Below are positions 1,411-48,098 of a stretch of DNA of 64,000 nucleotides, piece after piece. A program made the position numbers and the translations under genes. Source of the stretch: Octopus bimaculoides (taxonomy: Eukaryota). Within the stretch, counting starts at the first letter, position 1. Each line of letters opens with the position of its first letter. The stretch covers positions 43,541,331-43,605,330 of the forward strand of contig NC_068994.1 of NCBI RefSeq assembly GCF_001194135.2. The letters are read 5' to 3'. Under the pieces are notes generated by a model that had not been told where the DNA came from, did not search any database, and saw only the letters and a list, made by a program, of their open reading frames with translations.

Positions 1411-1844
1411 ATGGTCACATTTCTCTCATCAGAGGTAAAAATAAATCGATTAAAATAGTTTCAAAATTGAGAAAGCTTAAAATATCTCCTGCTTACAGAA
1501 CTTGAAGTCATATCAAGTAGTGTTATATTTTTTAAAACATGTTATAGTATTTTTAAAAAGGATATAGAAAGGCTTTGTGAAGTGGAAAATGTTCTGAAGT
1601 AAAACATTTGTGCGAATGAAAATGAACTTTAAAATATTTGTAAAAATAAAATAAAATGAGTCCACTTCACAAAGCCATTCCATATCCTTGCGAACTTTTT
1701 TAAAAATACAATAATATTTTTAAAGAATATAACACTATTCAATATGATTTCAAGTTCTGTAAGTAGGAGATATTTTAAGCTTTCTCAATTTTGAAACTAT
1801 TTTAATCGATTTATTTGTACCTCTGATGAGAGAAATGCAACCAT
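1411..1844. mobile_element. Fold-back MITE-like element (~175 bp inverted arms, ~74 bp spacer)
   Basis: 1418-1586 (CATTTCTCTCATCAGAGGTA...GCTTTGTGAAGTGGA) is the reverse complement of 1661-1837 at roughly 90% identity with one 9-bp indel; no coding capacity; no clear TSD. Confidence 0.8.
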
Positions 1845-4122: not shown

Positions 4123-4303
4123 AAGCACCCACTACACTCTCAGAGTGGTTGGCATTAGGAAGGGCATCCAGCTGTAGAAACTCTGCCAAATCAGATTGGA
4201 GCCTGGTGTAGCCATCTAGTTCATCAGTCCTCAGTCAAATCGTCCAACCCATGCTAGCATGGAAAGCGGACGTTAAACGATGATGATGATGATGCTGATG
4301 ATG
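4123..4303 (+). mobile_element. SINE/LINE-tail family c (GAT-tailed)
   Basis: GCACCCACTACACTCTC.GAGTGGTTGGCATTAGGAAGGGCATCCAGCTGTAGAAACTCTGCC...GGACGTTAAACGATGATGAT; close copies at 44575-44700 (+) and 47938-48098 (-), diverged copies near 31625, 31990, 40600, 51470 and 56100. Confidence 0.8.
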
Positions 4304-12125: not shown

Positions 12126-13875
12126 TATGTTCCTTATGGAGTAATGTAGACTAATCCAGATTGCTAGATCGATTGGAGGACTGCATCTCACATATACATG
12201 ATCCTATATCTTTTATGTGTAGGATCTATAAAGTGAAACTGAACACTGGTTTCACTGTTTGCCTCCATCCCATAGAATTGAACTGACAGGCTAATATTTC
12301 ACACAAACACACATACATACACACACACTCACACATACACTTGCACATGCACGTACACATTTACATGTATGCGTAAGGAATATGCATCTAAGTCATGGAT
12401 ATGATTGATATGTCAGTGCTGCTAAGCTAATTTCCCAATACATATTGCACTTTTGTCAAATTAAGTCCTTCTACACCCAGCTGAACCAAACAAGCTATAC
12501 AATGATGACAACTTTAGTTAGGGTGAACTAAGCTAAACCAAGCAAGGTGAAGCAATATCACCCAAATTTAAGTCAATCTCAAGGAATCAGCATGAAAATA
12601 AGCTTATCTAAGCTAGACTTAACCAAATCAAGCGAATCTTGCATAATTAGGCAGAATCAAACAGCAGAACACTAAGCCAGACTAAATTAACTTTTGATGT
12701 ACATAAGAAGTTGATAATTTAGGATAAAATATCCAAGCATAAGAAATTATTGTCAGCAACATTTAAGTGTATGGCTTTAATATCTATTTATGTAGTCGAA
12801 TGGAGATGGTGNNNNNNNNNNNNNNNNNNNNNNNNNNNNNNNNNNNNNNNNNNNNNNNNNNNNNNNNNNNNNNNNNNNNNNNNNNNNNNNNNNNNNNNNN
12901 NNNNNNNNNNNNNNNNNNNNNNNNNNNNNNNNNNNNNNNNNNNNNNNNNNNNNNAATTAGATTGGAAATAAAAACAAAAGAGGTTTACTGACTGTGACAT
13001 GAGTGGAAATTACAGAATGCTTGTGTACCAAAGGACAGATTAAGTAAAAACTTGTAGTTTATATCAAGTGATGTCACATGAGAATGTGTGAAGGAAAGAG
13101 ATGAACACACGACTTAACAATATAGAGAAAAATAGGAAATAATTTATTCTGATATCTTCACTTTGACAAATGTTAATCAGAAACATTTACACAAAGAGAT
13201 TAAGTTTTCAGACACTGGCTCTTCTAAAGAATTCTCAAAATAGCTTCGTATTACAGGAAAATTTCTAAAGTTATGAAAGTGCTTATTGTTATTAAGATGA
13301 CATATTTTTTTACTATTAATCTTTAATTATTCCAATCTAATATGGGTGTCTCTTCCAGCACCCTAAAATTGTGTCCTTCAGGGCTAAGCCTCTATTGTAA
13401 GTAAATTCTCCTCTTTCTCCTCCTCCTCCTCCTCATCATCATCATCCCTTTATCTCTCCTTCTTTCCAAGAGAGCTATGGTTGGACACAACAACTGAGTT
13501 ATAGACTAATTTATATATGACTTACAAATATTGTGTATCAATCCATGGTTCTGGACAGATTTTTTATTGCATCAGCCCCAGAAGAATGGAAGGTAAAGAT
13601 AACCTTGGCAAAATATTCCACCCAGAATACAAGGAACCAGAAACAAATTCTACAAGGCATTTGTCTGATCCTCTAACAACCTGGTCAATTAACACCCATC
13701 AAGTCAACGATATCAATTAATGTATTCATTGGTGTCTAGAATGAAGGCATAAAGAGTCATCACAAAATGTTCACTGAAAGAGGCATTTCATTCACAAGTA
13801 TTGATGAGGTACAATGAACAAAAATCACAGGCTAGTGAAGTAAAGTAGCTCAATTATACAGCGAGGAATGTTTAG

Positions 13876-14095
13876 CCCTTTAGCATTCAGATTATTCTAT
13901 CAAATGCAATGCTTCTTTATTTACACTGATTTGAATTAATCAGGTATTATTTCGTAGCTTTGAGATTCCAATGATATGATTGTTTCTCTTTTAGAATGAC
14001 ATTGTAGGAAAGATGTGAAAGGCTAGATATAGCTGGTCTGAACATAAAACAGGTAGAATATTGAACCAGATATGGTCATTTTAAAAGCTAAAGGG
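13876..14095 (+). mobile_element. piggyBac-type MITE (~220 bp family)
   Basis: TTAG|CCCTTTAGCATTCAG ... GCTAAAGGG|CTAG (decayed TTAA); second copy antisense at 36658-36870. Confidence 0.7.
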
Positions 14096-14204
14096 CTAGA
14101 GAAATATCAATAGGTTAGTGATGAGTGGAAAAGCTAATATTTCAGGCTCATTTCAATGAAGTGTGAAGAAAGACAAAGGTGGAATAATTATTATTAGTAA
14201 AATG

Positions 14205-14560
14205 CTGAAGGCGTCGAGGTAGCAGAACTGTTTGCAAGCCGGACAAAATGTTTAGTGATATTTCGTCTGTCATTATGTTGAGTTCAAATTCCACCGAGGT
14301 CTACTTTGCTTTTCATCCTTTCAGGGTCGATAAAATAAGTACCAGTCAAGTATTGGGGTCTATGTAATAGATTTCACCCTCCTCTCAAAAACTGCTGGCT
14401 TTGTGCCAAAATTTGTCCCGAGTTCAAATTCCACCAAAGTTGACTTTGCCTTTTATCATTTTGGGGTTTGTAAAATAGTACCAGTTGAATAGTGGGGTTG
14501 ATGTAATCAACTTACACTATACCCTGAACTTGCTGGCCTTGTACCAAAATTTGAAACCTA
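14205..14560 (+). mobile_element. Tandem copies of SINE family a (one 5'-truncated)
   Basis: B box GAGTTCAAATTCCACC at ~14280 and ~14419, each followed by GACTTTGCCTTT.ATC.TT..GGGGT...AAGTACCAGT. Confidence 0.75.
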
Positions 14561-16489
14561 TAATACTGTTTAAGCTTTTTTAGTCATCAGAACTCAACTG
14601 ACTCAATCTGATAAAATAATGACTATTATAAACTCACTTGTGATTTAAACATTCATAACTCTATTACATAAAAATTGTTTTCTGTGCTCTAAAACTTCTT
14701 TTTTATTAGCTAAGTTACTGTAATAAATTTAACATAGAGAGCGTTAAAAAGCCTACCTAGAAATAATTATTTGCTGATGAAAAACAATGTTTATCAACTA
14801 CTAATTAATATTATTTGAGAAAGTATGGGAGACAACTCCAGATATGTTTCAATCTTATTATGACCTCATTGTTTCAGAAAATCAATTTTCTATTGTCACA
14901 GATTTTTGTTATATTGGATGACACATGATAGATAGTTGAAAGACTTTTGGTCAAAGATGCAAATTAGCATGCAATCTTTGCTATATTTGGTTGATTTAAT
15001 CACTGTTAGAATTAAAATCTTACTGTACAAAATCTGAATTCAAACAGTTGTTCTGTTGTAGCAAGGTTTGACCAATAACAGGAAAAAATATAAGTGTAGA
15101 GGTAAGTTCCGGATATAAGTCAGTTTTATGATTTGTACTTGGAATTCATTTTTGCATAAATGATAAATAATGAACAGCTAATTACAATAGCATAGACCAT
15201 CTCCTCTGATAACATTTTACATTTAAAAACGATTAAAGCTATTTTGATTGAATGTATTTGGAAATTTTCCAAATATGCTGCTGACCATTCTCTGAATCAT
15301 AGAAATCAGGTTTCAAAACTTTACCAGGTTGGAGCAGAAGAACAAACAAATGAGCTACCATGGAGTTTCTGGAGAGAGGGAGGGAGAGAGGGAGAGAAAG
15401 AGGGGAAAGAGAGACAGAGACAGAGACCAGACAGACAGGTAGACACCTTGAGAGAGACAGATACAAAGACAGACAGACAGACAGACAGAATGATAAATGT
15501 TTGCTGAAGATAGCTAATTTTAATATACACTGTTTCAGGGTGGTGTAAGGGATACCTATAATAGGTTAGAATAATTGAAGATTGATAGTAAAAAAATTAT
15601 CATCTTAATAACAATAAGCACTTTCATAACTTTAGAAATTTTCCTGTAATACGAAGCTATTTTGAGAATTCCTTAGAAGAGCCAGTGTCTGAAAACTTAA
15701 TCTCTCTGTGTAAATGTTTCTGATTAACATTTGTCAAAGTGAAGATATCAGAATAAATTATTTCCTATTTTTCTCTATATTGTTTAGTCGTGTGTTCATC
15801 TCTTTCCTTCACACATTCTCATGTGACATCACTTGATATAAACTACAAGTTTTTACTTAATCTGTCCTTTGGTACACAAGCATTCTTTAATTTCCACTCA
15901 TGTCACAGTCAATAAACCTCTTTTGTTTTTATTTCCAATCTAATTCACTCTATTTCAGACCAACCGCAACTAGCCTACCTATACTTTATCACCATCTCCA
16001 TTCGACTACATAAATAGATATTAAAGCCATACACTTAAATGTTGCTGACAATAATTTCTTATGCTTGGATATTTTATCCTAAATTATCAACTTCTTATGT
16101 ACATCAAAAGTTAATTTAGTCTGGCTTAGTGTTCTGCTGTTTGATTCTGCCTAATTATGCAAGATTCGCTTGATTTGGTTAAGTCTAGCTTAGATAAGCT
16201 TATTTTCATGCTGATTCCTTGAGATTGACTTAAATTTGGGTGATATTGCTTCACCTTGCTTGGTTTAGCTTAGTTCACCCTATCTAAAGTTGTCATCATT
16301 GTATAGCTTGTTTGGTTCAGCTGGGTGTAGAAGGACTTAATTTGACAAAAGTGCAATATGTATTGGGAAATTAGCTTAGCTGCACTGACATATTAATATC
16401 CCTGATTTATCTAAATAGATTGTCCCTATGTGTGCATATATATGCATGCATGCATGCATACATAAACACATATCTATATATACTATATA

Positions 16490-17081
16490 CAATAATCTCT
16501 TGACTATCACAGGTGTTACATTCCAAACCCCACCCACAATAGGTGAAAATCCTCGAAGTAAAAACTACTGTATTGTATAATATTTTCATTATTTTTATAA
16601 TTTGTATATATTTCGTATGTGTATTTCGTGTGCAAGATTCTTGATGTGGATACGTGTGTTGAAAGAAATACAATTAAACCTTGGGAGAGGCATTATGCCG
16701 GTAATAAACACACGCACTGGTTCAGTCCTTTATTAATTTATATAGTTTTTTGTTAAATTATTTCATTGCACTCTTGCAATATTCAAAATAAATGGAAGTG
16801 GAGAGACAAGTTACTGAAGAGATTGCAAGAGTGCAATGAAATAATTTAACAAAAAACTATATAAATTAATAAAGGACTGAACCAGTGCGTGTGTTTACTA
16901 CTGGCATAATGCCTCTCCCAAGGTTTAATTGTATATATTTATTTTATTATAAATGCAAACCGACACCTAGGAGGAATCGATGTAAGCTTAAATAATAAAC
17001 CGCGAAAGGTGAACCGTGATAGGTGAAACGCAATATGGCAAGGGATTACTCTATGTATATATGTATGGCGAGGGATTACTG
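16490..17081. mobile_element. pogo/Tigger-like MITE with duplicated right terminus
   Basis: TA|CAATAATCTCTTGACTATCAC ... CGCGAAAGGTGAACCGTGATAGGTGAAACGCAATATGGCAAGGGATTACTC|TA and a second end ATGGCGAGGGATTACTG|TA; matches the CAGTAATCCCTCG-type pogo TIR with TA TSD. Confidence 0.75.
16671..16931. mobile_element. Hairpin MITE (110 bp arms, 41 nt loop) nested in the Tigger-like element
   Basis: 16671-16780 and 16822-16931 are reverse complements with 2 mismatches; flanked by TA on both sides. Confidence 0.85.
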
Positions 17082-17344
17082 TATGTATGTATGTTCATAT
17101 ATTTATATACATATATATATATATATAGATATAAATGTTTTAAATATATTTTGAAGTCAAAACATTATAAGTTATACAGAAAATTAATAATACAGTTCAA
17201 TGATTGGTATTTCAAAATTTCAGGTTTAGGTTCCCCTTTTTTATGGAAATTATCGAGGAAAGGTGTGTGTGTGTGTGTGTGTGTGTCTAAGGAGTATAGT
17301 ATTTCCATTGTCTATTAGAGTGTTGAAACTTTTCTTTAAACGAG

Positions 17345-17515
17345 CAGGAATCGGCACAGCTGTGTGGTTAAGAAGCTCATTTTGCAACAACATAGTTTCT
17401 GCTTCAATCCCACTATACAACATCTTGGGCAAGGGTTTACTTCCACAGCCCCAGGTCAACCAATGACTTGTAAGTAGATTTGACAGACAGGAACTGTATG
17501 TAAGCCTATGATGTG
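17345..17515 (+). mobile_element. SINE family b 5' half
   Basis: TGTGGTTAAGAAGC...GCTTCAATCCCAC...TTGGGCAAGGGTTTACTTCCACAGCC...GGAACTG followed by (TG)n. Confidence 0.7.
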
Positions 17516-17535
17516 TGTGTGTATGTAAGCCTATG

Positions 17536-17574
<39 letters not shown>

Positions 17575-17959
17575 CATGCATGTGTGGTTACTCAGTTTCC
17601 ATAGTGTATAGGGGACTGGGATCACATTTCCCTGAGTGAGATGTCAAACTCGAACAGGATTCAAGACTAGGAATTTTAGTATTTTAAGCGAAGGGTCAGG
17701 TCGATTACATCAACTCCAGTACTTGAATGCTACATTATTTTATCATCTCCAAAGGAATGAAAGCTAAGCTACCCTCATCAGGATTTGAACTCAGAATGTA
17801 ACGAGTCAGAAGGAATGTTGCTAAGCATTTTGTCTCGTGCTAATTTTGCTAACTCATCCTAGATTTTTTATACAGATATATATATACACACCAATCTATA
17901 TCTGGCTGGTACTTTTCTTTTATCATCTTCATAAAATATAAAAGCATAGTTTTAGTCTT

Positions 17960-18600
17960 TTATTATAATTCCCTTCAAATCTAGGATGCTCTATAGTAAT
18001 ATTAAATCAATCCCAGTATTTAACTGGCACTTTAATTCTGCTGACCCAAGGAAAGATTAAAGACAAAGTTCATTCAAATTTAAAATGCTTTATAGACATC
18101 AAATCAACCCCAGTATTGAACTGGTTGTTTTGTTGACTCCAGGAAAAATGTAAAGCAAAGTTAATTCAATATAGCTGTTATAATTCTGTTGAAATCTAGG
18201 ATGCTCTACAGTAGTATCAAATGAGTTCTAGTATTGAAGTGGCACTTCAATTTTGGTGACACAAGGGAGAATTGAACATGGTTTCATTTTTCTATCATAA
18301 TTCCATTCAAATCTAGGATGCTTTAGAGGAGCATTAAATAGACATTAGTACATGTCTGGTATGATATTCAGTGGTCTTGGAAAGAACAAAAGCAATGTTA
18401 GTCTTAACTATCTAACACAATTGCAATCGCATTTAGGATGTTTTATAAGAACATATATAACCCCAGAACTTGACTAAAAAATTATTTTATCAACACCCAT
18501 TTACATCTAGGATGCATTGTGGGAATACTAATGAGTCTCAGTATTTCACTGATACTTTATTTTATTGCCTTCAGAAATATGAAAGACGAAAAATCTTCTC
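17960..18600. repeat. Degenerate ~75-120 bp tandem array (six units)
   Basis: Anchor TCTAGGATGC (or variant) at 17980, 18079, 18195, 18312, 18432 and 18506, usually followed by an antisense SINE-a segment. Confidence 0.7.
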
Positions 18601-18621
18601 AGCAGGATTTGAACTGAGAAG

Positions 18622-18853
18622 GGAGCGAGCTGGCAGAAACGTTAGCCCACCAGGCGAAATGCTTCGCGGTATTTCGTCTGCCACTACGTTCTGAGTTCAA
18701 ATTCTGCTGAGGTCGATTTGACTTTCATCCTTTCGGGGTCGATTAAATAAGTACCAGTTACACACTGGGGTCGATATAATCGACTTAATATGTTTGTCTG
18801 TCCTTGTTTGTCCTCTCTGTTGGTGTAGCCCCTTGAGGGCAGTAACGAAATAA
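18622..18853 (+). mobile_element. SINE family a with tail X (young copy)
   Basis: TGGCAGAAACGTTAGC...GAGTTCAAATTC...CACTGGGGTCGAT...TTTGTCTGTCCTTGTTTGTCC...AGCCCCTTG.GGGCAGTAACGAAATAAG; CpGs largely intact; very similar to 39545-39780. Confidence 0.85.
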
Positions 18854-19006
18854 GGATTTGAACTGAGAAAGTGAAAAGCTTTAACCAAGCACTACAAGGA
18901 AGGTATTTTATCTGAAGTTCTAGCAATTCGTCCATTCTCAAACCCATAACTCAATGATATCAATACTGAATATTTATGTGAACCAGATACAATAGCATAA
19001 ACGACG

Positions 19007-19390
19007 ATGTTGATGGTGGTGGTGATGGTAGTGGTGGTGGTGGTGGTGGTGATGGTGGTGGTGGTGGTGGTAGTAGTGGTGGTGGTGCAGGTGGTGGTGC
19101 TGGTGGTGCTGGTGGTGCTGGTGGTGCTGGTGCTGGTGGTGCTGGTGGTGTCAGCAGTGGCAGTGGTGGTTCTGCAGGTGGTGGTGGTAGTGGTGGTAGT
19201 GGTGGTTGTGGTGTTAGTGGTGGCTGTGGTTGTAGTGGTGGTGGTGGTGGTGGTGGTGGTGGTGGTGGTCATGGTCGTAGTAGTGGTCGTGGTAGAGGTC
19301 GTGATGGTGGTGGTGGTCATAGTCATAATAGTGGTGGCTGTGGTGGTGGTCGTGATGGTGGTAGTGGTGGTAGCGGGGGTTGTGGTGTCA
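19007..19390. repeat. Degenerate (GGT)n triplet array with (GGTGCTGGT)n sub-array
   Basis: ~385 bp in-register triplets; minus strand reads poly-Thr. Confidence 0.9.
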
Positions 19391-19672
19391 TTGTACCGGG
19401 CATTATGATCCAGATGATATGAGAAGATGAGTATAAGTAGGTGGTTATTGATCATGATTACCATGATAATTATAATTCTATTTTCAGCCCCTTAATTGTT
19501 ATTAGTTGGGAGACGATTTAAGGGAAACAATGAGAGAAAGAGAGAGAGAGAGTGAAAGAGTGTTGAGGAAAGAAATGGTGAGAAGAGACTGGGAGCAAGA
19601 GGGAGACACACACACACACACACACACATATATGCATGTGCATGTGTGTGTGCGTGCATGTGCATATTATAC

Positions 19673-19704
<32 letters not shown>

Positions 19705-19734
19705 AACATAAATATATATACATATACATATATG

Positions 19735-19796
<62 letters not shown>

Positions 19797-20022
19797 TATA
19801 CACACATGCATACATACATACATATATATATGTGTATGAATATACACACATGCATACATACATACATCCACACACACGCACATGCACATGTGCACATAAA
19901 CACATGCGCACATAAACACATGCACACACACATATAGACAGATAGAGAGGGGTGGGGAGGGGAGAGATGGGGGGAGGGTAGAGAGAGTTATGGAATGAGT
20001 GAGAATGAGCAAATAGAGGAAA

Positions 20023-20058
<36 letters not shown>

Positions 20059-21171
20059 GGGCAGAGAGAAAGAGAGAGTGAGAATTCTTGGAGAGGAGAA
20101 AGACTGGAAGACAATGAGAAAGTTGTTTCAAAGAAAGAAAGAATAAAAAAAAAAGAAAGAAAACATAAGAAGAAAAAGAAGATAAAGGAAGTGCAAGAGA
20201 AAGAGAGTAGGAGAAGTAAATAGCATAAAAGTTGGAGGCTGGAAGAAATGGAAGACAGAATTTTTAGTTGAGAATTGACAGATAATTTATTGACAATTGT
20301 GGTAAGTTTGATTATGACCAAGAAGAGAGACAGACAAGGAATGGTCAAGAACATTGAAATCTACTTCCCAAGAGAGCTTAAGGCTATGTCTCATGCTGAC
20401 CCTGTCCATGTTATTAAGCCGTTTTAACAAATCTTCACATCGTGTCTGTTACATGTTTATGCACTACGCAATGATGGCTAACACACCTAATATAAGTTAA
20501 GTATGAGTCACATATACAAGCATGTGGTGAAAAATATTGATTTATCTGTTTTACAACTAGGCACAAGGAACTTAAGATGTATGGAAGAGAAAATTGGGGG
20601 AAATGGCTTGTTTTAATCTAAATATTGTACAGTTTGTAAAGACTTTTGCAACATTTCCAGAAGTCATTAGAGATCCACTGGGGAAGCTTCACTTTGGATG
20701 CTCGACTTACTAGAAATAGCAAGCAATTTCCTCAAAATTACACTTTCTGAGTAATGTGAGGCTCAAGTATGAACTTGTTTGAGAAAGTTAAAACAAACAC
20801 AAGCCCTATGACTGAGAATAAGAAAAAGATGAAGAATAAAATATGCAAAAAGACAGAATGGTCATGGCTGGAATATCTTTGATCATAGGTCTGCTCAACC
20901 ATGCCTGGGGCTAAACAACAACAGCATTAGCAGCATGACTAAAATGAGATAACAATACCGAGAAACCAAAACTGAGTTGCAGAATGCATTTGCGATTTCC
21001 GAAGTTAAATTGAGTTTAGAATACAGAGAATGACACAACTATAAACTGCCATGCACTTAATATGATGCCCTACCACCACTTGTGTTAATATACCACATAC
21101 TCTTCAGATTACACTCTACTGGCTTGAAAAGGAAGAAGACATGTGGAGCCTAAATAATGTAATTCTTAATC

Positions 21172-21308
21172 TTTTATACTCTAGGCCCAAGGCCCAAAAT
21201 TTTGGGGGAGAGGGCCAGTCGATTAGATTGATCCCAGTACACAAGTGGTACTTAGTTTATCAACCCCGAAAGGATGAAAGGTAAAGTTGACCTCAGCAGA
21301 ATTTGAAC
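21172..21308 (-). mobile_element. SINE family a with tail Y, antisense, 5'-truncated
   Basis: Reverse complement GTTCAAATTCTGCTGAGGTC...GGTACC...GGCCTTGGGCCTAGAGTA. Confidence 0.7.
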
Positions 21309-21383
21309 TTAAGAGCGCGGGCTACTAATCCCAAGATTCTGAGTTCGATTCCAGGCAGTGACCTGAATAATAATGATACTAAA

Positions 21384-21446
<63 letters not shown>

Positions 21447-21625
21447 TATAATAACAATAATAACATCGAAAAATACCTTAGGAATGAGAACCCGGTTCGA
21501 AATTTCCCCAAGACACATGATGAAGGCTGGAAGGTATATCAGCCGAAACATTGTGTTAACAACAAACAAGATGAGGACAAATATCCATCAAATGTAAATA
21601 ATGTAAATAATTTAAATAATGTAAA
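21309..21625 (+). mobile_element. tRNA-headed element with (AAT)n linker and Penelope-type tail carrying a minimal hammerhead-like motif
   Basis: Head TTAAGAGCGCGGG-CTACTAA-TCCCA...GAGTTCGATTCC (B box 21341-21352); (AAT)n ~21365-21463; motif GACAC-ATGATGA-A-GGCTG-(10 nt)-CAGCC-GAA-ACAT-T-GTGTT at 21512-21557; ends in ~9-mer (AATGTAAAT) repeats. Confidence 0.7.
21512..21557 (+). ncRNA. Minimal type I hammerhead ribozyme-like motif (degenerate: C3>A, stem III ACGT>ACAT)
   Basis: Stem I GACAC/GTGTT, core (C)TGATGA, stem II GGCTG/CAGCC, GAAA, 4-nt stem III and H17: the architecture of minimal hammerheads in Penelope-like elements. Confidence 0.6.
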
Positions 21626-21629
21626 CCAA

Positions 21630-21870
21630 CACTAGTTGTCAAATTCTGGTGGAGGCGACCAAACACACACACACACACAAACACACGCATGCATACACAT
21701 ATATGTATATGGCAGGCTTCCACACAGTTTCCACCCACCAAATCTTGTCACACAGCATTGGTTGGCCTGAGTGGGGTCTTGTAGAAGGTACTTCTCCAAG
21801 GTACCATGCAGTGGGACTGAACCTGAAATCATGCAATTGAATAGCAACGACTTAACCACACAACCATGCC
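21630..21870 (-). mobile_element. SINE family b, antisense
   Basis: GGCAGGCTTCCACACAGTTTCC...GAAGGTACTTCTCCAAGGTACCATGCAGTGGGACTGAACC...CTTAACCACAC. Confidence 0.7.
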
Positions 21871-22756
21871 AGAAGAAAGAAATTATCAATTTTATTAAAG
21901 AAAATGTTGTTAATATGATCATAGTATTAGAAGTGGAATGGCAATCCAATGGAACAGTCTGCTCATGAAATTAACATGAATGTAGCTGAGCATTCCACAG
22001 CCACATATACCCTTAAAGTAGTTCTTAGGGAGATTCAGTGGGACATAGAGTGTGACAAGGTTGGCCCTTTGAAATACCAGTACTTCTCATTTTTGCCAAC
22101 TGAGTAGACTGAAGCAATGTGAAATAAAGTATTTTGCTCAAGGACTCAACGCATTGCTGGGAATTGAACTCATGATCTAACGATCATAAAGACTAATGCC
22201 ACTTAATTTATCACCCCTGAAAGGATGAAAGGCAAAGTCAACCTTGGTGGAATATGAACTCAGAACATAAAGACGGATAAAATACCGCTAAGCATTTCAC
22301 CCGGCTTGCTAACGTTTCTCCCAGTTCACCACATTTGTGTGGTAAAATATTAAGAAAATATGATCAGACTTTCACTCATATAATGACCATTCAAAAAGAA
22401 AGAGGGAATCTTCTCTAAAACTGAAAATTTCCAGCTATTAGCATGAGGTATTTCCCAGAAATAACATGTAACTTATTTGGTTGTATTTAACATTTAAAAC
22501 TGAAAGAGAACCTTGTTAAATAACTCAAATGTAGATATATTTTACAAATAGTTGGAGAATTGCATGCAAGCTAAAACACATTTTCTTTTCATTTTTTTCT
22601 CTCAGTGTGTCACTTCCTTTCTCCCTCAATCTCTCTCTCTCTCTCTCTCTCCGTCTCTCCTTCCTCTCAACATATGTAATTAATTATATTGACACATGCC
22701 TGCACACATGCATAAACACTCACATGCCTGCATGGATGGATACTCACACATATATC

Positions 22757-22800
<44 letters not shown>

Positions 22801-22802
22801 CA

Positions 22803-22833
<31 letters not shown>

Positions 22834-23010
22834 TATATACATTCATATATATATATGTGTGTGTGTATATATATATATATATCATATATCACCTATTGTA
22901 AATTATATATAATATATTATATATCACATATAAATTATATATAATATGTTACACAATAGATAAATATATATATATATATATATGTATTCATACATAATTA
23001 CACACACACA

Positions 23011-23067
<57 letters not shown>

Positions 23068-23237
23068 ATTCAAACACAGTTACACACACACACACATTAA
23101 ATTAATAACACAGTAATAAAAGCATCCAATTAATAGAAATTCTAATATAGTTTACCTACAATAATTGCTTAATATTCCTCTCCAGAATTCAGATTGCTAA
23201 TTAATTTCAAAAACAAAAAAATAAACAAAGTCATAAA

Positions 23238-23270
<33 letters not shown>

Positions 23271-23721
23271 GTAAATAAATAAACAAATGAAGAGTATTTT
23301 CAGTAGGTTTTCATAATTGTCCATCAAATTTTTCCTCTTTCATTGCCAACGTGAAACAATAATTGTTGGTAACATTTGCTAGTAAATAAAATTCCAGCTT
23401 TGCCTAGAAATCTGAACGAATTGCATCGAAAATAATGAAATGCTAAACTGTACATTCTAATTGCGTATTAATAGTTCCACAATTTCCTGTAATTAATGGT
23501 ACAAGTAAAGGACATTTGGACAGAAATATCTGGCTAAGCTGAGCTACACTTTCCCTCTTTTGTCTCTCCTAATCTTTATTTTTCTTCCAGCTCTCATTCT
23601 GCTCTTTACTGTATATATTAAATATGTTGAAGTGTACATGGTGTATACACGGTGTGTGTGTGTGTGCGTGTGTGTTTGCGTGTGTGTGTGTGTGTTTGTC
23701 TCTGTGTGTGTGTGCATGTGT

Positions 23722-23821
23722 GTGTGTTTAAGTATTCACATGTGTGTTTATTTTTGAGTGTTTCTGTTACAATATACATTAATGTGCATATATTATATAC
23801 ACTTGTTGTACTTACACACAG

Positions 23822-23852
<31 letters not shown>

Positions 23853-24300
23853 CACACGTGCACGCACACATACATACACACACATAAATATATATGTACA
23901 CGTATATTACATATAGACACATATATGTGTGAATGTTTGTGTGTATGTACTTATATGTGTGTGTTTAAGCATTCACATGTGTGTTTATTTTTGAGAGTTT
24001 CTGCTACAATATATATTAATGTGTATATATTATACATACTTGTACTTACACACACACATAAATATATATATGTACACGTATATCTCATATAGACACATAT
24101 ATATGTGAATGTATTTGTGTATTTATATGTGTGTGTTTAAACATTCACATGTATGTTTATTTTTGAGAGTTTCTACTACAATATATATTAGTGTGTATAT
24201 ATTATACACACTTGTACTTACACACACACACACATACATACACACACATAAATATATATGTACACATATATCACATAGAAACATATGTGAGAGTATGTGA
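23722..24300. repeat. Tandem triplication of a ~170-240 bp unit with internal variable (CA)n
   Basis: TTTAA.(C/T)ATTCACATGT.TGTTTATTTTTGAG.GTTTCT..TACAATATA.ATTA at 23727, 23964 and 24136 (periods 237 and 172). Confidence 0.9.
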
Positions 24301-25367
24301 TATGCACTTATGTATATATGTATGTGTATGTGTATGTGTGCATGTTAATGTTTGATTATATTTGAAGCTGTGTATAAAAACTATTTAACAGTACACTGAA
24401 GTATTATTCAATGCTTTTAGGTAGAATATATATTTATAAATGTGTACAAGGGAAAGGTTGACAGTGATTTTGAAGTTTTGGCTTGCTTCATTAGACTGTC
24501 TGGTGAAGGCAAGAAAGCCTAAACTCTCAAGACAATGCAAAACTTCTCCTTGTAAAAATTAATTATATATATAGAGAACAAATTACCTTATTTGCTGAAA
24601 AAAGTCAGAAACCATGGTCCAGGAGATAGATGGTAAATGTTTTTATTTTTCATTCCCTTCGAAGTTTTATTCCTAATAGTCGTCTGGATTTTGGCTGTTC
24701 CTTCTAGTGTGCCAGGAATCCTATGACGGATACCTCTTATGGGTTTAAATGTACACTGTATTTATATGAATAATATATAGTCTATTATATATATATATAT
24801 ATATATATATAGTTCAAAAAAACAATAACAAAAAAACAAAAAAACAACAAAGTGAGGACGTGATATGGATAGTATTATTGGNNNNNNNNNNNNNNNNNNN
24901 NNNNNNNNNNNNNNNNNNNNNNNNNNNNNNNNNNNNNNNNNNNNNNNNNNNNNNNNNNNNNNNNNNNNNNNNNNNNNNNNNNNNNNNNNNNNNNNNNNNN
25001 NNNNNNNNNNNNNNNNNNNNNNNNNNNNNNNNNNNNNNNNNNNNNNNNNNNNNNNNNNNNNNNNNNNNNNNNNNNNNNNNNNNNNNNNNNNNNNNNNNNN
25101 NNNNNNNNNNNNNNNNNNNNNNNNNNNNNNNNNNNNNNNNNNNNNNNNNNNNNNNNNNNNNNNNNNNNNNNNNNNNNNNNNNNNNNNNNNNNNNNNNNNN
25201 NNNNNNNNNNNNNNNNNNNNNNNNNNNNNNNNNNNNNNNNNNNNNNNNNNNNNNNNNNNNNNNNNNNNNNNNNNNNNNNNNNNNNNNNNNNNNNNNNNNN
25301 NNNNNNNNNNNNNNNNNNNNNNNNNNNNNNNNNNNNNATATATATACATATATATACATATATATAC

Positions 25368-30301: not shown

Positions 30302-30852
30302 ATCTGTATGTGCATATATGTGCTAATGAGTGTATATGCCTCAATGTTCCTAATTAGGTATGAAGATATTGATCAGATATAACGATATGATGTATACACT
30401 GAAGGCAATATTCGAGAAATGGTTTTATTGAAGCAGAAACACACCACAAAATATACACATATAATGTATAGACAGACACTTGAGTATAAATATATACCCA
30501 CACCTAGAGAAATTGGCAAATATTTAGAGAGACAATAAGCAAATAGTGAAACAGTTTATTGATTACACACACAAACTGTTTAATTGTATGAGTTCATATG
30601 TGTATACAGGCATACAACAGTGTCTATACAAAATTTTTTCATATCTACGCACACTCATACGTTCATATTCCATTCACACTGCCATTCATATACATACACT
30701 CAAATACAACACAGACACACGCTCACATATATGTGGGTATATATATTCATTTATGTATATGTGTGTGTCTGCATTCATTGACTTCATTGACAGATGTGTA
30801 TGTGTGTGTGTGTGTAGTTATATACATATATATGTGCATAGAGAGAGAGCGC

Positions 30853-31118
30853 GAGAGAGAGAGAAAGAAAGAGAGAGAGAAAGAAAGAGAGAGAGAAAGA
30901 AAGAAAGAGAGAGAGAAAGAAAGACAGAGAGAAAGAAAGACAGAGAGAAAGAAAGACAGAGAGAAAGAAAGACAGAGAGAAAGAAAGACAGAGAGAAAGA
31001 AAGACAGAGAGAAAGAAAGACAGAGAGAAAGAAAGACAGAGAGAAAGAAAGACAGAGAGAAAGAAAGACAGAGAGAAAGAAAGACAGAGAGAAAGAAAGA
31101 CAGAGAGAAAGAAAGAGA
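30853..31118. repeat. 16-bp purine minisatellite (GAGAGAAAGAAAGACA)n
   Basis: About 12 perfect 16-mers preceded by GA/GAAA precursors. Confidence 0.95.
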
Positions 31119-31874
31119 AAGATACATACATATCTGTATGTATTTACATACACAACACACACACACACACACACACGTACACACACACATATACACATAT
31201 GTATGTAACTCATTCTGCATTCTCAACATCATCCCTTACCACTATATCCATCCCTGAACACCTTCATAAGCCTGCCATTGACAGCCCCTACACCTTTGTT
31301 CCTCACTCCCAATTTCCTCCCTATATAGCTCTGACCTCAGTCTCTGTCACTGCATATCCCTCTATCTCTCACACCCTCTCTCACTTCACATCATCATCTC
31401 CCTATTTCTCATCTGTCTCCACTTTTATTATATACTGCTACTCTCCACCCCTCCTTTTTTTATACTTACATTTATTACCTCCTCCTCTTTCCAGATCCAC
31501 TCCCATTTCCTACACCTTCACTCTCATTCTAATATTCACCAGTGACTGTTCCTTCTACCTCAATATCCAACCCACTTAGTTGAGTGTGAGTGTGATACCG
31601 AGGGAGGCAGTTCACTAATGCTGGTACCATGAAAAAACACCTACTATGCTCAGTAGAGTGATTGGCATTAGAAAGGGCATCCAGCCACAAAAATCATGCT
31701 GAAGCAAAGCAGACAATGGAATTCAATGCAGACCTCTCTGACTTGTCGGATCCTGTTAAATGATGCAATTCATACCAGCATAAAGGACAAATGTTAAATG
31801 ATAATGATGATGATGTATAGCTCTGTCTCCCTCTTTCTCTCTTCATTTTCTCAGTTTCTCTCTCTCTCTCCCTC

Positions 31875-47320: not shown

Positions 47321-47937
47321 ATATATCATCTTAGGGTGTTAAATAGAAGAAATTGTAAAAGTAGGTATATGAGTATAATTGCAATATATTACAATATACT
47401 ACTAATCAATACTAATGCTATAGATAAGCAGTGTGTAAATTAATGTTAGTAAATTGATACGTGAATAAAATAGAAATTAAAGATTAAAAAATAAAAATAA
47501 AGTATAAATTATATTGAAAATAAGGGGGAAATCCATAAATTAAAGATTAAATGTGTAATTAAATGTATAATTAAAGATTAAATGTGTATACAATCAAAAC
47601 AATGACAATAGTTAAAGGTGCGTTCTTTTGGGTGTATTATAATATAATATAATTAAATACTACAGAGATGAAAATGCAAATAGCCTAAAAGAAAAGAAAA
47701 TAACTTTATAACATAAGACATAGTATGTTACTGCGTAGTCAAGTGATAGTTTGTTATGTAACTAGAAATGTAAACAGAATGCAATATGGAGAAAATGTAT
47801 ATAGACAATATTAGTAATTAATTTTAGGTGAAAGACATTCAAAAAAGATTTATTACACTTTGTAAGTACCTAAGAAGTTAAGTAACTTAAAAGATGGAAG
47901 AACTTAATACTAGGTTTAATTAACGTGTATTGTTATT

Positions 47938-48098
47938 CATCATCATCATCATCATCATCGTTTAACGTCCGCTTTCCATGCTAGCATGGGTTGGACGATT
48001 TGACTGAGGACTGGCAAGCCAGAAGGCTGCACCAGGCTCCAATCTGATCTGGCAGAGTTTCTACAGCTGGATGCCCTTCCTAACGCCAACCACTCCAA
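47938..48098 (-). mobile_element. SINE family c 3' part, antisense (young)
   Basis: (CAT)n CGTTTAACGTCCGCTTTCCATGCTAGCATGGGTTGGACG...CTAACGCCAACCACTCC; reverse complement of 4123-4303 and 44597-44698. Confidence 0.85.

What the first reader, a model, noticed from the sequence alone, without database searches (positions are those of the whole stretch)
12404..16397. ~4 kb palindrome with ~99% identical ~0.9 kb arms and decayed fringes (possible arm-to-arm gene conversion)
Seen: the arms differ at only ~7 of ~750 positions, yet homology continues inward for ~73 bp at only ~80% identity and fades outward with an indel near 12392/16408. There is no transposase and no clear TSD; the spacer holds ordinary old MITE/SINE copies. 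Inference: an old inverted duplication whose core is homogenised by conversion, or a fold-back element. If transcribed it would form ~0.9 kb of near-perfect dsRNA (ADAR or siRNA substrate, relevant given heavy RNA editing in coleoids). The right arm predicts that the 143-N gap (12812-12954) is really 44 bp (reverse complement of 15946-15989). Alternative: ~1% divergence is also what two haplotypes of a misassembled inversion would show.
Basis: partly seen in the sequence, partly recalled or inferred. Interest (0 to 1): 0.7.

Follow-up and report, generated by a model that had tools for sequence, protein, structure and literature searches.

The report
Small octopus inverted duplication, homogenised core
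A real but ordinary 4-kb non-coding inverted duplication in an octopus chromosome, whose ~0.8-kb arm cores are about 99% identical while the inner edge is only 82% identical, most likely because one arm was copied onto the other during DNA repair (gene conversion).

Summary
The arms 12404-13302 and 15598-16397 pair in inverted orientation with 9 differences in 756 aligned bases. Inward, 71 more bases pair at 82%. Outward, the homology is only marginal. The arm sequence is low-copy: the 2.34-Gb assembly (size and scaffold count match Octopus bimaculoides GCA_001194135.2) holds only the two arms and one 656-nt unplaced contig of the same locus. That contig carries the same 44 nt as the right arm where the left arm has its 143-N gap. 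The gap lies in the longest stretch (371 nt) without arm-specific variants, so it is a repeat-induced contig break.

The haplotype or misassembled-inversion alternative is unlikely. The arm divergence is 15 times the published 0.08% heterozygosity, the edges are far more diverged, the flanks are unrelated, and both arms are joined to their own edges inside gap-free sequence.

It is not a transposon family. I found no other copies, subrepeats, target-site duplication, ORF or Rfam hit.

The best reading is an old inverted duplication whose core was homogenised by arm-to-arm gene conversion. This is inferred, not shown. The main rival is a recent re-duplication at an older short inverted repeat. 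The dsRNA/ADAR idea could not be tested. Interest is low.

The parts
12389..12403 (.). Left outer fringe. 12389-12400 pairs 10/12 with 16398-16409. 12401-12403 is a 3-nt indel.
   Evidence: Marginal significance (score 15 against a shuffle maximum of 14).
12404..12811 (+). Left arm, outer block (408 nt). It has 3 differences from the right arm, at 12407, 12420 and 12518.
12812..12954 (.). Assembly gap (143 N) inside the left arm. Predicted real length is 44 nt, the reverse complement of 15946-15989.
   Evidence: Contig C31539 (L003) carries the same 44 nt between sequence 100% identical to 12422-12811 and 98.6% identical to 12955-13176. The gap lies in the 371-nt stretch that has no arm-specific variant.
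12955..13302 (+). Left arm, inner block (348 nt). It has 6 differences from the right arm.
13304..13374 (+). Left inner fringe, 71 nt, 82% complementary to 15527-15597.
   Evidence: Its only other match in the genome is the right arm.
13375..15526 (.). Spacer, 2152 nt, with no palindromic symmetry. It holds old dispersed repeats at 13871-14098, 14690-14870 and 14880-15265, and tandem SINE-like copies at about 14200-14560. Its ends carry mirrored CT-rich microsatellites at 13408-13434 and 15371-15489.
   Evidence: It has no ORF with a Pfam hit.
15527..15597 (-). Right inner fringe, 71 nt, 82% complementary to 13304-13374.
15598..15945 (-). Right arm, inner block (348 nt).
15946..15989 (-). The 44 nt of the right arm that face the left-arm gap.
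15990..16397 (-). Right arm, outer block (408 nt).
16398..16409 (.). Right outer fringe, 10/12 complementary to 12389-12400.
12300..12360 (.). CA/ACACAT microsatellite outside the left arm. It mirrors the ATGC/CA-type microsatellite at 16442-16463 outside the right arm and may be the decayed outer end of the ancestral repeat.
   Evidence: Low-complexity sequence, so this is suggestive only.

Best explanation
This is a real, local, non-coding inverted duplication on chromosome-scale scaffold C14 of an octopus genome. The assembly matches Octopus bimaculoides GCA_001194135.2 in size and scaffold count.

The duplication itself is old. At the inner edge the two copies are 18% diverged (Jukes-Cantor K about 0.21). 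Beyond both edges only mirrored microsatellites remain.

A core of about 0.8 kb (about 12421-13300 and its partner) is only about 1% diverged. The likely reason is that one arm served as the template to repair the other: intrachromosomal, non-crossover homologous recombination, that is, arm-to-arm gene conversion. This happened either once about 1% divergence ago or repeatedly. Conversion tracts would stop where indels, microsatellites and accumulated mismatches break the homology, which would give the sharp steps in identity at about 12420 and about 13301.

The 143-N gap is a contig break caused by the longest variant-free stretch between the arms. It should close to 44 nt.

No function is evident, and the element is most likely neutral. 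A crossover between the arms would simply flip the 2.15-kb spacer.

Shown: the structure, the copy number, the two-phase divergence and the cause of the gap.
Inferred: conversion as the homogenising process, and neutrality.
For: Structure and two-phase divergence:
- The arms differ at 9 of 756 positions and the inner fringe at 13 of 71. Fisher P = 1.3e-9.
- The steps in identity are sharp. There are no differences in 13229-13300, then a mismatch, an indel and 18% divergence. There are no differences in 12421-12517, then 2 mismatches in 17 nt, an indel and weak similarity.

The fringe is part of the same old repeat, not a dispersed element that mediated a rearrangement:
- Its only other genomic match is the other arm, at 81%.
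- Microsatellites beyond both edges mirror each other.

Low copy number:
- Only the two arms and the 656-nt contig C31539 match, even at E <= 10.

The two copies are real:
- Arm-specific variants lie no more than 102 nt apart, except for one 371-nt stretch, and the gap falls inside that stretch.
- Both gap edges abut the same 44 nt of the right arm.
- The right arm, the spacer, the left inner block and both inner fringes lie in one gap-free stretch, 12955-24881.
- The arm divergence is 15 times the published heterozygosity of 0.08% (PMC7656900). Poisson P = 1.7e-8.

Consistent with exchange between the arms:
- C31539 differs from the right arm at a single site, which is one of the four arm-diagnostic sites in its range, and it carries the left-arm base there. 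The chance probability is about 0.002.
- Divergence is uneven inside the core: 1 difference in 468 nt against 5 in 313 nt, P = 0.04.

Precedent and tract size:
- Human inverted duplications of 94% identity contain a 782-bp tract of 99.9% identity.
- Conversion tracts are usually a few hundred bp and rarely exceed 1 kb (PMC3961182).
Against: - No outgroup, second individual or reads could be examined, so concerted evolution is not demonstrated.
- A single, more recent duplication event laid over an older short inverted repeat predicts the same sharp steps.
- Conversion between sequences that were already 18% diverged would be inefficient. The model therefore needs either continuous homogenisation since the origin or one unusually long tract of about 0.8-0.9 kb.
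- The mosaic contig C31539 can equally be an assembler product. A collapsed, bubble-popped contig of the two arms would look the same, and its ends lie near the points where arm differences become dense.
- The outer fringe, which matters for the claim that the old repeat is larger than the core, is only marginally above shuffled controls.
- The identification of the assembly rests on size and scaffold count only.
Confidence: 0.55

Rival explanations
1. Two-step structural origin without conversion. An old, short, diverged inverted repeat (the 71-nt fringes and the mirrored microsatellites) already flanked the spacer. A single recent replication or repair accident then copied about 0.88 kb of one flank in inverted orientation onto the other side. 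Candidate accidents are fold-back priming or a template switch at that short repeat, of the FoSTeS/MMBIR or inverted-duplication type. The new arms have since diverged by about 1%.
For: The identity steps at about 13301 and about 12420 are sharp. The outer fringe is only marginally significant, so the outer end could be a plain non-homologous junction. Core divergence is roughly uniform and low.
Against: The homology does continue outward, 10/12 after a 3-nt indel, and BLAST extends it. Two of the three outer-block differences sit in the outermost 17 nt, which looks like erosion rather than a clean junction. The model still needs an older inverted repeat at the same place. Microsatellites mirror each other outside the arms as well as inside, which suggests that the old repeat spanned the whole arm.
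Confidence: 0.2
2. Assembly artefact. Either the left arm, or the near-identity of the cores, was created by the short-read assembler, gap closing or scaffolding. Possible causes are two haplotypes of an inversion polymorphism stitched together, or reads of one arm used to build the other.
For: The assembly is heavily gapped: 13 N runs in the window and a mean of 16% N in random samples. One arm is interrupted by a gap. A redundant, mosaic, unplaced contig of the arm exists.
Against: Nine arm-specific variants lie on both sides of the gap. That is 15 times the 0.08% heterozygosity, P about 2e-8. The 82% fringes and the unrelated flanks cannot be alleles. The left inner block, the spacer and the whole right arm are in one gap-free stretch. 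Both gap edges meet the same 44 nt of the right arm. The flanks and the spacer have no extra contigs, so the region is not generally represented twice. The gap position is what a true two-copy repeat predicts.
Confidence: 0.08
3. A single-copy transposable element with long terminal inverted repeats (fold-back-like, or a long-TIR non-autonomous DNA element). Its near-identical arms would reflect recent insertion.
For: The overall shape fits: long inverted termini around a non-coding middle. The termini contain CAGTG (12412-12416), loosely reminiscent of hAT-type ends. That resemblance is recalled from memory and was not tested.
Against: There is no other copy or relative in 2.34 Gb, even at E <= 10. 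There are no tandem subrepeats in the arms. There is no target-site duplication of 3 nt or more at any candidate end. There is no transposase-like ORF or Pfam hit. The homology decays gradually at the inner edge, and the spacer is filled with unrelated old repeats.
Confidence: 0.07
4. A functional hairpin-RNA locus. The region would be transcribed as one RNA whose ~0.8-kb stem feeds Dicer (endo-siRNAs) or acts as an ADAR substrate, with arm complementarity kept by selection.
For: If both arms were on one transcript they would pair almost completely: 406 of 408 and 341 of 348 bases, with cofold energies of -721 and -564 kcal/mol. O. bimaculoides shows exceptionally strong hyper-editing and many loci able to form long dsRNA (PMC5625713).
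Against: There is no evidence of transcription. There is no Rfam match. There is no homologous target elsewhere in the genome for siRNAs to act on. The arm differences do not favour pair-preserving changes: 1 of 9 is a G:U wobble on the + strand RNA and 4 of 9 on the - strand RNA. Such potential dsRNA structures are common in this genome, so potential alone says little.
Confidence: 0.05

Closest known systems
Inverted segmental duplications with embedded high-identity conversion tracts, such as the inverted repeats that flank human polymorphic inversions (for example HsInv0209; PMC3961182)
   Same: Two inverted copies flank a unique spacer. Average identity is lower, with an embedded tract of several hundred bp at about 99% or more; HsInv0209 has 782 bp at 99.9% inside 94% duplications. 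Both are expected to mediate spacer inversion and to exchange sequence by gene conversion.
   Different: The arms here are about 0.9 kb, just under the usual 1-kb threshold for a segmental duplication, and the spacer is only 2.15 kb. The organism is a cephalopod. Inversion polymorphism was not examined.
Large sex-chromosome palindromes maintained by arm-to-arm gene conversion (human Y P1-P8; primate and mouse X palindromes; PMC8600007, PMC8327919, bioRxiv 10.1101/800185)
   Same: The architecture is the same: palindrome, then spacer, then near-identical arms. The proposed homogenising mechanism is also the same.
   Different: Those palindromes have arms longer than 8-10 kb, usually at 99.9% identity or more, and they carry testis-expressed gene families. 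This one has 0.9-kb gene-free arms at 98.8% identity. I did not determine whether its scaffold is a sex chromosome, and there is no sign of selection.
Fold-back (FB) elements and MITEs
   Same: Inverted termini around a non-coding middle, with no transposase.
   Different: Those families are multi-copy and have target-site duplications, and FB elements have tandem subrepeats in the termini. None of these was found here. A true MITE-like family member lies next door, at 16662-16940, for contrast.
Hairpin-RNA (hpRNA) endo-siRNA loci of Drosophila, and long inverted-repeat ADAR substrates
   Same: There is potential to form a long, near-perfect intramolecular RNA duplex.
   Different: No transcription or small-RNA evidence is available. 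There is no trans target with homology to the arms. The loop is more than 2 kb.

Membership tests
Inverted duplication homogenised by gene conversion (concerted evolution) | Two copies in inverted orientation at one locus, both really present in the genome | tested here: met
   The arm-specific variants, distinct fringes and flanks, and gap-free contiguity argue for two real copies. Read depth and long reads are not available.
Inverted duplication homogenised by gene conversion (concerted evolution) | Heterogeneous divergence: a tract far more similar than the rest of the duplicated sequence | tested here: met
   Core 9/756 against inner fringe 13/71, Fisher P = 1.3e-9. The outer fringe is marginal.
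Inverted duplication homogenised by gene conversion (concerted evolution) | Paralogous arms within a species are more similar to each other than to their orthologues in a related species, or arm variants are shared between haplotypes | not testable with these tools
   No other cephalopod genome or reads can be reached. The mosaic contig C31539 fits this feature but may be an assembler product.
Fold-back element / long-TIR DNA transposon | Multiple related copies in the genome | tested here: not met
   Only the two arms and the 656-nt contig of the same locus match at E <= 10.
Fold-back element / long-TIR DNA transposon | Target-site duplication flanking the termini | tested here: not met
   No direct repeat of 3 nt or more at four candidate end pairs.
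Fold-back element / long-TIR DNA transposon | Termini built of tandem subrepeats (FB elements), or an internal transposase | tested here: not met
   Tandem Repeats Finder finds no array in the arms apart from a 28-nt trace at 15930-15957. No non-gap ORF of 55 aa or more in the arms, and no Pfam hit in the spacer ORF tested.
Large sex-chromosome-type palindrome | Arms longer than 8-10 kb with more than 99% identity, carrying genes | tested here: not met
   The arms are about 0.8-0.9 kb, 98.8% identical, and have no ORFs.
Hairpin RNA / dsRNA-producing locus | Transcription through both arms, and derived small RNAs or clustered A-to-I editing | not testable with these tools
   No expression data. 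Only the pairing potential was computed. No Rfam family matches.
Haplotype or inversion misassembly | Divergence between the copies is comparable to heterozygosity, and the flanks are allelic | tested here: not met
   1.2% against the published 0.08%. The fringes are 82% identical and the flanks are unrelated.

The most novel reading that the evidence does not exclude
The locus is a transcribed hairpin-RNA gene of an octopus. Its ~0.8-kb stem would be kept complementary by conversion and/or selection, and it would serve as a dedicated long-dsRNA source: endo-siRNA precursor, or ADAR sponge or substrate. The mosaic contig C31539 would then record a still-segregating arm-to-arm conversion event.
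Probability: 0.04. Interest if true: 0.6.

Novelty: new member of a known kind. Interest (0 to 1): 0.18.

Why it matters
The biological significance is small. Small inverted duplications with conversion-like high-identity tracts are well known, and the octopus genome is already reported to be unusually rich in sequence able to form long dsRNA (PMC5625713).

The practical value is modest:
- It gives a specific gap-closing prediction: 143 N should become 44 nt.
- It documents how a two-copy repeat with a 371-nt variant-free stretch breaks this short-read assembly and leaves a mosaic orphan contig.
- It marks a candidate site for a small (2.15-kb) flip-flop inversion polymorphism.
- If the locus is transcribed, it would be one more hyper-editing substrate.

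If orthologous loci showed concerted evolution of the arms, this would be a neat autosomal, gene-free example of arm-to-arm conversion in a mollusc.

Tried and rejected
1. Dispersed repeat or transposon family. Whole-genome searches with the outer arm, the inner arm, the complete right arm (E <= 10) and the inner fringe found nothing beyond the locus itself and contig C31539. Rejected.

2. Repeat-mediated rearrangement, that is, fringes belonging to a dispersed family. The fringe has no other copies, and the left-flank hits are only CA microsatellite. Rejected.

3. Fold-back subrepeats. Tandem Repeats Finder at score 30 or more found none in the arms.

4. Target-site duplication. None found.

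5. Coding or RNA content. No ORF of 55 aa or more in the arms apart from frames running through the N gap. No Rfam hit in the whole window. No convincing Pfam hit for seven window ORFs; one sub-threshold Gate match, 19 bits against a cut-off of 29.6.

6. Independent assemblies through exact-protein look-up of two arm ORFs, 37 aa spanning the 44 nt and 53 aa spanning the right outer junction. Nothing is on record, and the window's own genome may be left out of that collection.

7. Genome-wide base rate. Those 160 kb contain no inverted repeat of 300 nt or more, which is too little for a rate.

8. Hidden symmetry in the spacer beyond the fringe. Only CT-rich low-complexity similarity was found.

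9. One paper id recalled from memory for the 2015 octopus genome paper is not held. The heterozygosity figure was therefore taken from PMC7656900, which cites that paper.
Full report
**Observation**

Exact-seed extension and a gapped local alignment give two high-identity blocks:
- 12404-12811 pairs with 15990-16397 (408 nt, 3 differences).
- 12955-13302 pairs with 15598-15945 (348 nt, 6 differences).

After a 1-nt indel, 13304-13374 pairs with 15527-15597 (71 nt, 13 differences, 82%). The arms therefore differ at 9 of 756 aligned positions (1.2%, Jukes-Cantor K = 0.012). The inner fringe differs at 18% (K = 0.21). The contrast is highly significant (Fisher P = 1.3e-9).

The steps in identity are sharp. 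There are no differences in 13229-13300 before the inner step, and none in 12421-12517 after the outer step.

Two of the three outer-block differences lie in the outermost 17 nt. They are followed by a 3-nt indel (12401-12403), 10 of 12 matches (12389-12400 / 16398-16409), and then gapped similarity in low-complexity sequence. That similarity scores 15, against a maximum of 14 in 200 shuffles. BLAST does extend the left-arm match to 12389.

Microsatellites lie just beyond all four arm ends, and they mirror each other:
- CA/ACACAT at 12300-12360 faces ATGC at 16442-16463.
- CTC at 13408-13434 faces GGAG/AGAC at 15371-15489.

This suggests that the ancestral repeat reached about 1.15 kb per arm. 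The evidence is suggestive only.

**The gap, tested first**

The window is a gapped short-read scaffold with 13 N runs. The run at 12812-12954 (143 N) interrupts the left arm. Its two edges are collinear with the right arm, where the corresponding positions are separated by 44 nt (15946-15989).

The assembly also holds a 656-nt unplaced contig, C31539 (locus L003). It covers the equivalent of 12422-13176 and carries the same 44 nt, letter for letter. The best estimate for the gap is therefore 44 nt. This is an inference from homology, not a read-through.

The gap has a simple cause. Successive arm-specific variants are 13 to 102 nt apart, apart from one stretch of 371 nt (12518 to 12988, counting the gap as 44 nt). 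The gap lies inside that stretch. Short reads cannot phase across it. No reading frame is involved.

**Which genome**

The window is G000:C14:43541331-43605330 in an assembly of 2,342,534,168 bases and 145,327 sequences. A published table lists the chromosome-scale Octopus bimaculoides assembly GCA_001194135.2 with 145,326 scaffolds and 2342.5 Mb (PMC10700109). I take this as the identification. It rests on those numbers only.

**Is it real or an assembly artefact?**

Several independent points favour two real copies.

1. The published heterozygosity of O. bimaculoides is 0.08% (PMC7656900). That predicts 0.6 differences in 756 nt. Nine are seen (Poisson P = 1.7e-8).
2. The fringes (82%) and the flanks (unrelated) cannot be alleles.
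3. The left inner block, its fringe, the spacer and the entire right arm with its right flank lie in one gap-free stretch, 12955-24881.
4. Both gap edges abut the same 44 nt of the right arm, which a misplaced or misoriented contig would not do.
5. Neither the flanks nor the spacer have extra contigs elsewhere. The region is therefore not generally represented twice.

Read depth and long reads, which would settle it, are not available here.

**The orphan contig**

C31539 differs from the right arm at one position only (16283). That position is one of the four arm-diagnostic sites in its range, and there the contig carries the left-arm base. It differs from the left arm at 12988, 13013 and 13115.

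A random single difference would land this way with probability of about 0.002. The mosaic is therefore not chance. It is either a real haplotype produced by exchange between the arms, or a collapsed contig in which the assembler picked one branch at each arm-specific bubble.

The second reading fits two facts. The switch lies in the unphaseable 371-nt stretch. The outer end of the contig (12422) lies next to the point where the arms start to diverge. I lean to the assembler explanation, at roughly 60:40. Either way the contig belongs to this locus, and it does not make the arm a dispersed repeat.

**What it is not**

The arm is not a repeat family. Searches of the whole 2.34-Gb assembly with the outer arm, the inner arm, the complete right arm (E <= 10) and the inner fringe return only the two arms and C31539.

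The other negative results are:
- no tandem subrepeats in the arms;
- no target-site duplication at any plausible end;
- no non-gap ORF of 55 aa or more in the arms;
- no Rfam match anywhere in the window;
- no convincing Pfam match for seven window ORFs, including the longest non-repetitive spacer ORF.

Fold-back element, MITE and long-TIR transposon are therefore not supported.

- 13871-14098: more than 5000 first-look candidates, 80-84% identity;
- 14690-14870: about 75% identity;
- 14880-15265: 66-70% identity;
- a tandem SINE-like pair at about 14200-14560.

The spacer shows no palindromic symmetry beyond the CT-rich ends. The pairwise divergence of the 13871-14098 element from its relatives (about 17-19%) is similar to the arm-to-arm divergence of the fringe. 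This fits an old structure.

**How it most likely came about**

Because the fringe has no other copy in the genome, it is part of the same old inverted duplication. It is not a dispersed element that happened to mediate a rearrangement.

The simplest account has four parts.
- The inverted duplication is old, with K of about 0.2. At 2.4e-9 per site per generation, the rate estimated for another octopod (PMC7656900), this is about 4e7 generations.
- A core of about 0.8 kb was homogenised by arm-to-arm gene conversion.
- The last homogenisation was about 1% divergence ago (about 2.5e6 generations).
- Conversion tracts end where indels and accumulated mismatches interrupt the homology.

The tract size fits published figures: tracts of a few hundred bp that rarely exceed 1 kb. 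There is also a close precedent in human inverted duplications of 94% identity that contain a 782-bp tract of 99.9% identity (PMC3961182). The uneven spread of the six core differences (1 in 468 nt against 5 in 313 nt, P = 0.04) hints at more than one event.

None of this demonstrates conversion. The main rival is a single recent fold-back or template-switch re-duplication anchored at an older short inverted repeat. It predicts the same sharp steps, and only orthologous loci can separate the two. I put conversion at about 0.55 and re-duplication at about 0.2. Artefact, single-copy transposon and functional hairpin are each below 0.1.

**Function**

None is evident. If one transcript contained both arms, they would pair almost completely: 406 of 408 and 341 of 348 bases, with cofold energies of -721 and -564 kcal/mol.

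O. bimaculoides is reported to have both exceptionally strong hyper-editing and an exceptionally high fraction of loci (4.4e-3) able to form long, near-perfect dsRNA with their surroundings (PMC5625713). That makes the ADAR-substrate idea plausible in kind. It also makes this locus unremarkable.

The arm differences show no bias towards pair-preserving changes. There is no homologous trans target for siRNAs.

**Base rate**

It contains no inverted repeat of 300 nt or more, and one of 161 nt. In the 64-kb window, this locus is the only long, close-range inverted repeat other than small MITE-like hairpins and artefacts of N runs. Such structures are thus not ubiquitous, but the sample is too small to give a rate.

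**Verdict**

- The inverted duplication and its two-phase divergence are real.
- The 44-nt gap prediction is supported.
- The haplotype alternative and the fold-back element are not supported.
- Conversion is the best inference but is not shown.
- The dsRNA idea is untested.

This is a new member of a known kind. Interest is low.

Noticed in passing
window 16662-16940: A palindromic, MITE-like element of about 285 nt (119-nt arms, 97% complementary, 41-nt loop) lies 265 nt to the right of the right arm. It belongs to a young, high-copy family in this genome: at least 1227 first-look candidates and full-length copies up to 98% identical. Many 164-nt derivatives match positions 125-288 of the query at 98%.
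   Followed up: partly
G000:C31539 (L003), 1-656: An orphan 656-nt contig duplicates the central part of the arm. It is a mosaic, left-arm type at 12518 and right-arm type at 12988, 13013 and 13115. It is either a segregating conversion haplotype or a collapsed assembler contig.
   Followed up: partly
window 13871-14098, 14200-14560, 14690-14870, 14880-15265: The spacer consists largely of old dispersed repeats. One family has more than 5000 first-look candidates at 80-84% identity. There is a tandem pair of SINE-like copies, and two further families at 66-75% identity. Only about 1 kb of the spacer is unique.
   Followed up: partly
window 1411-1537 / 1718-1844: Another small inverted repeat (127-nt arms, 93%, 180-nt spacer), probably a MITE-like element.
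   Followed up: no
whole window, and loci L029-L044: The assembly is very gapped and rich in microsatellites. The window has 13 N runs, and many ORF-like frames are just CA/TA/ATAC repeats. Sixteen random 10-kb samples average 16% N, with up to 42% in one. Features that sit next to gaps in this assembly need care.
   Followed up: partly
window 18960-19427 and 30790-31130: Two long tandem arrays: one of 9-nt period (GGT/ACC-rich) and one of 8/16-nt period (GA-rich, about 340 nt). Both produce long spurious open frames.
   Followed up: no
window 4143-4301 / 47937-48095: A 159-nt pair at 94% identity in inverted orientation, 43.6 kb apart. These are presumably two copies of a dispersed repeat.
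   Followed up: no
window 13194 and 13228 (facing 15706 and 15672): On a hypothetical + strand transcript, these two arm differences place an A opposite a C. From my own knowledge, that is the mismatch context ADAR edits most readily. This is anecdotal, since there are no expression data.
   Followed up: no
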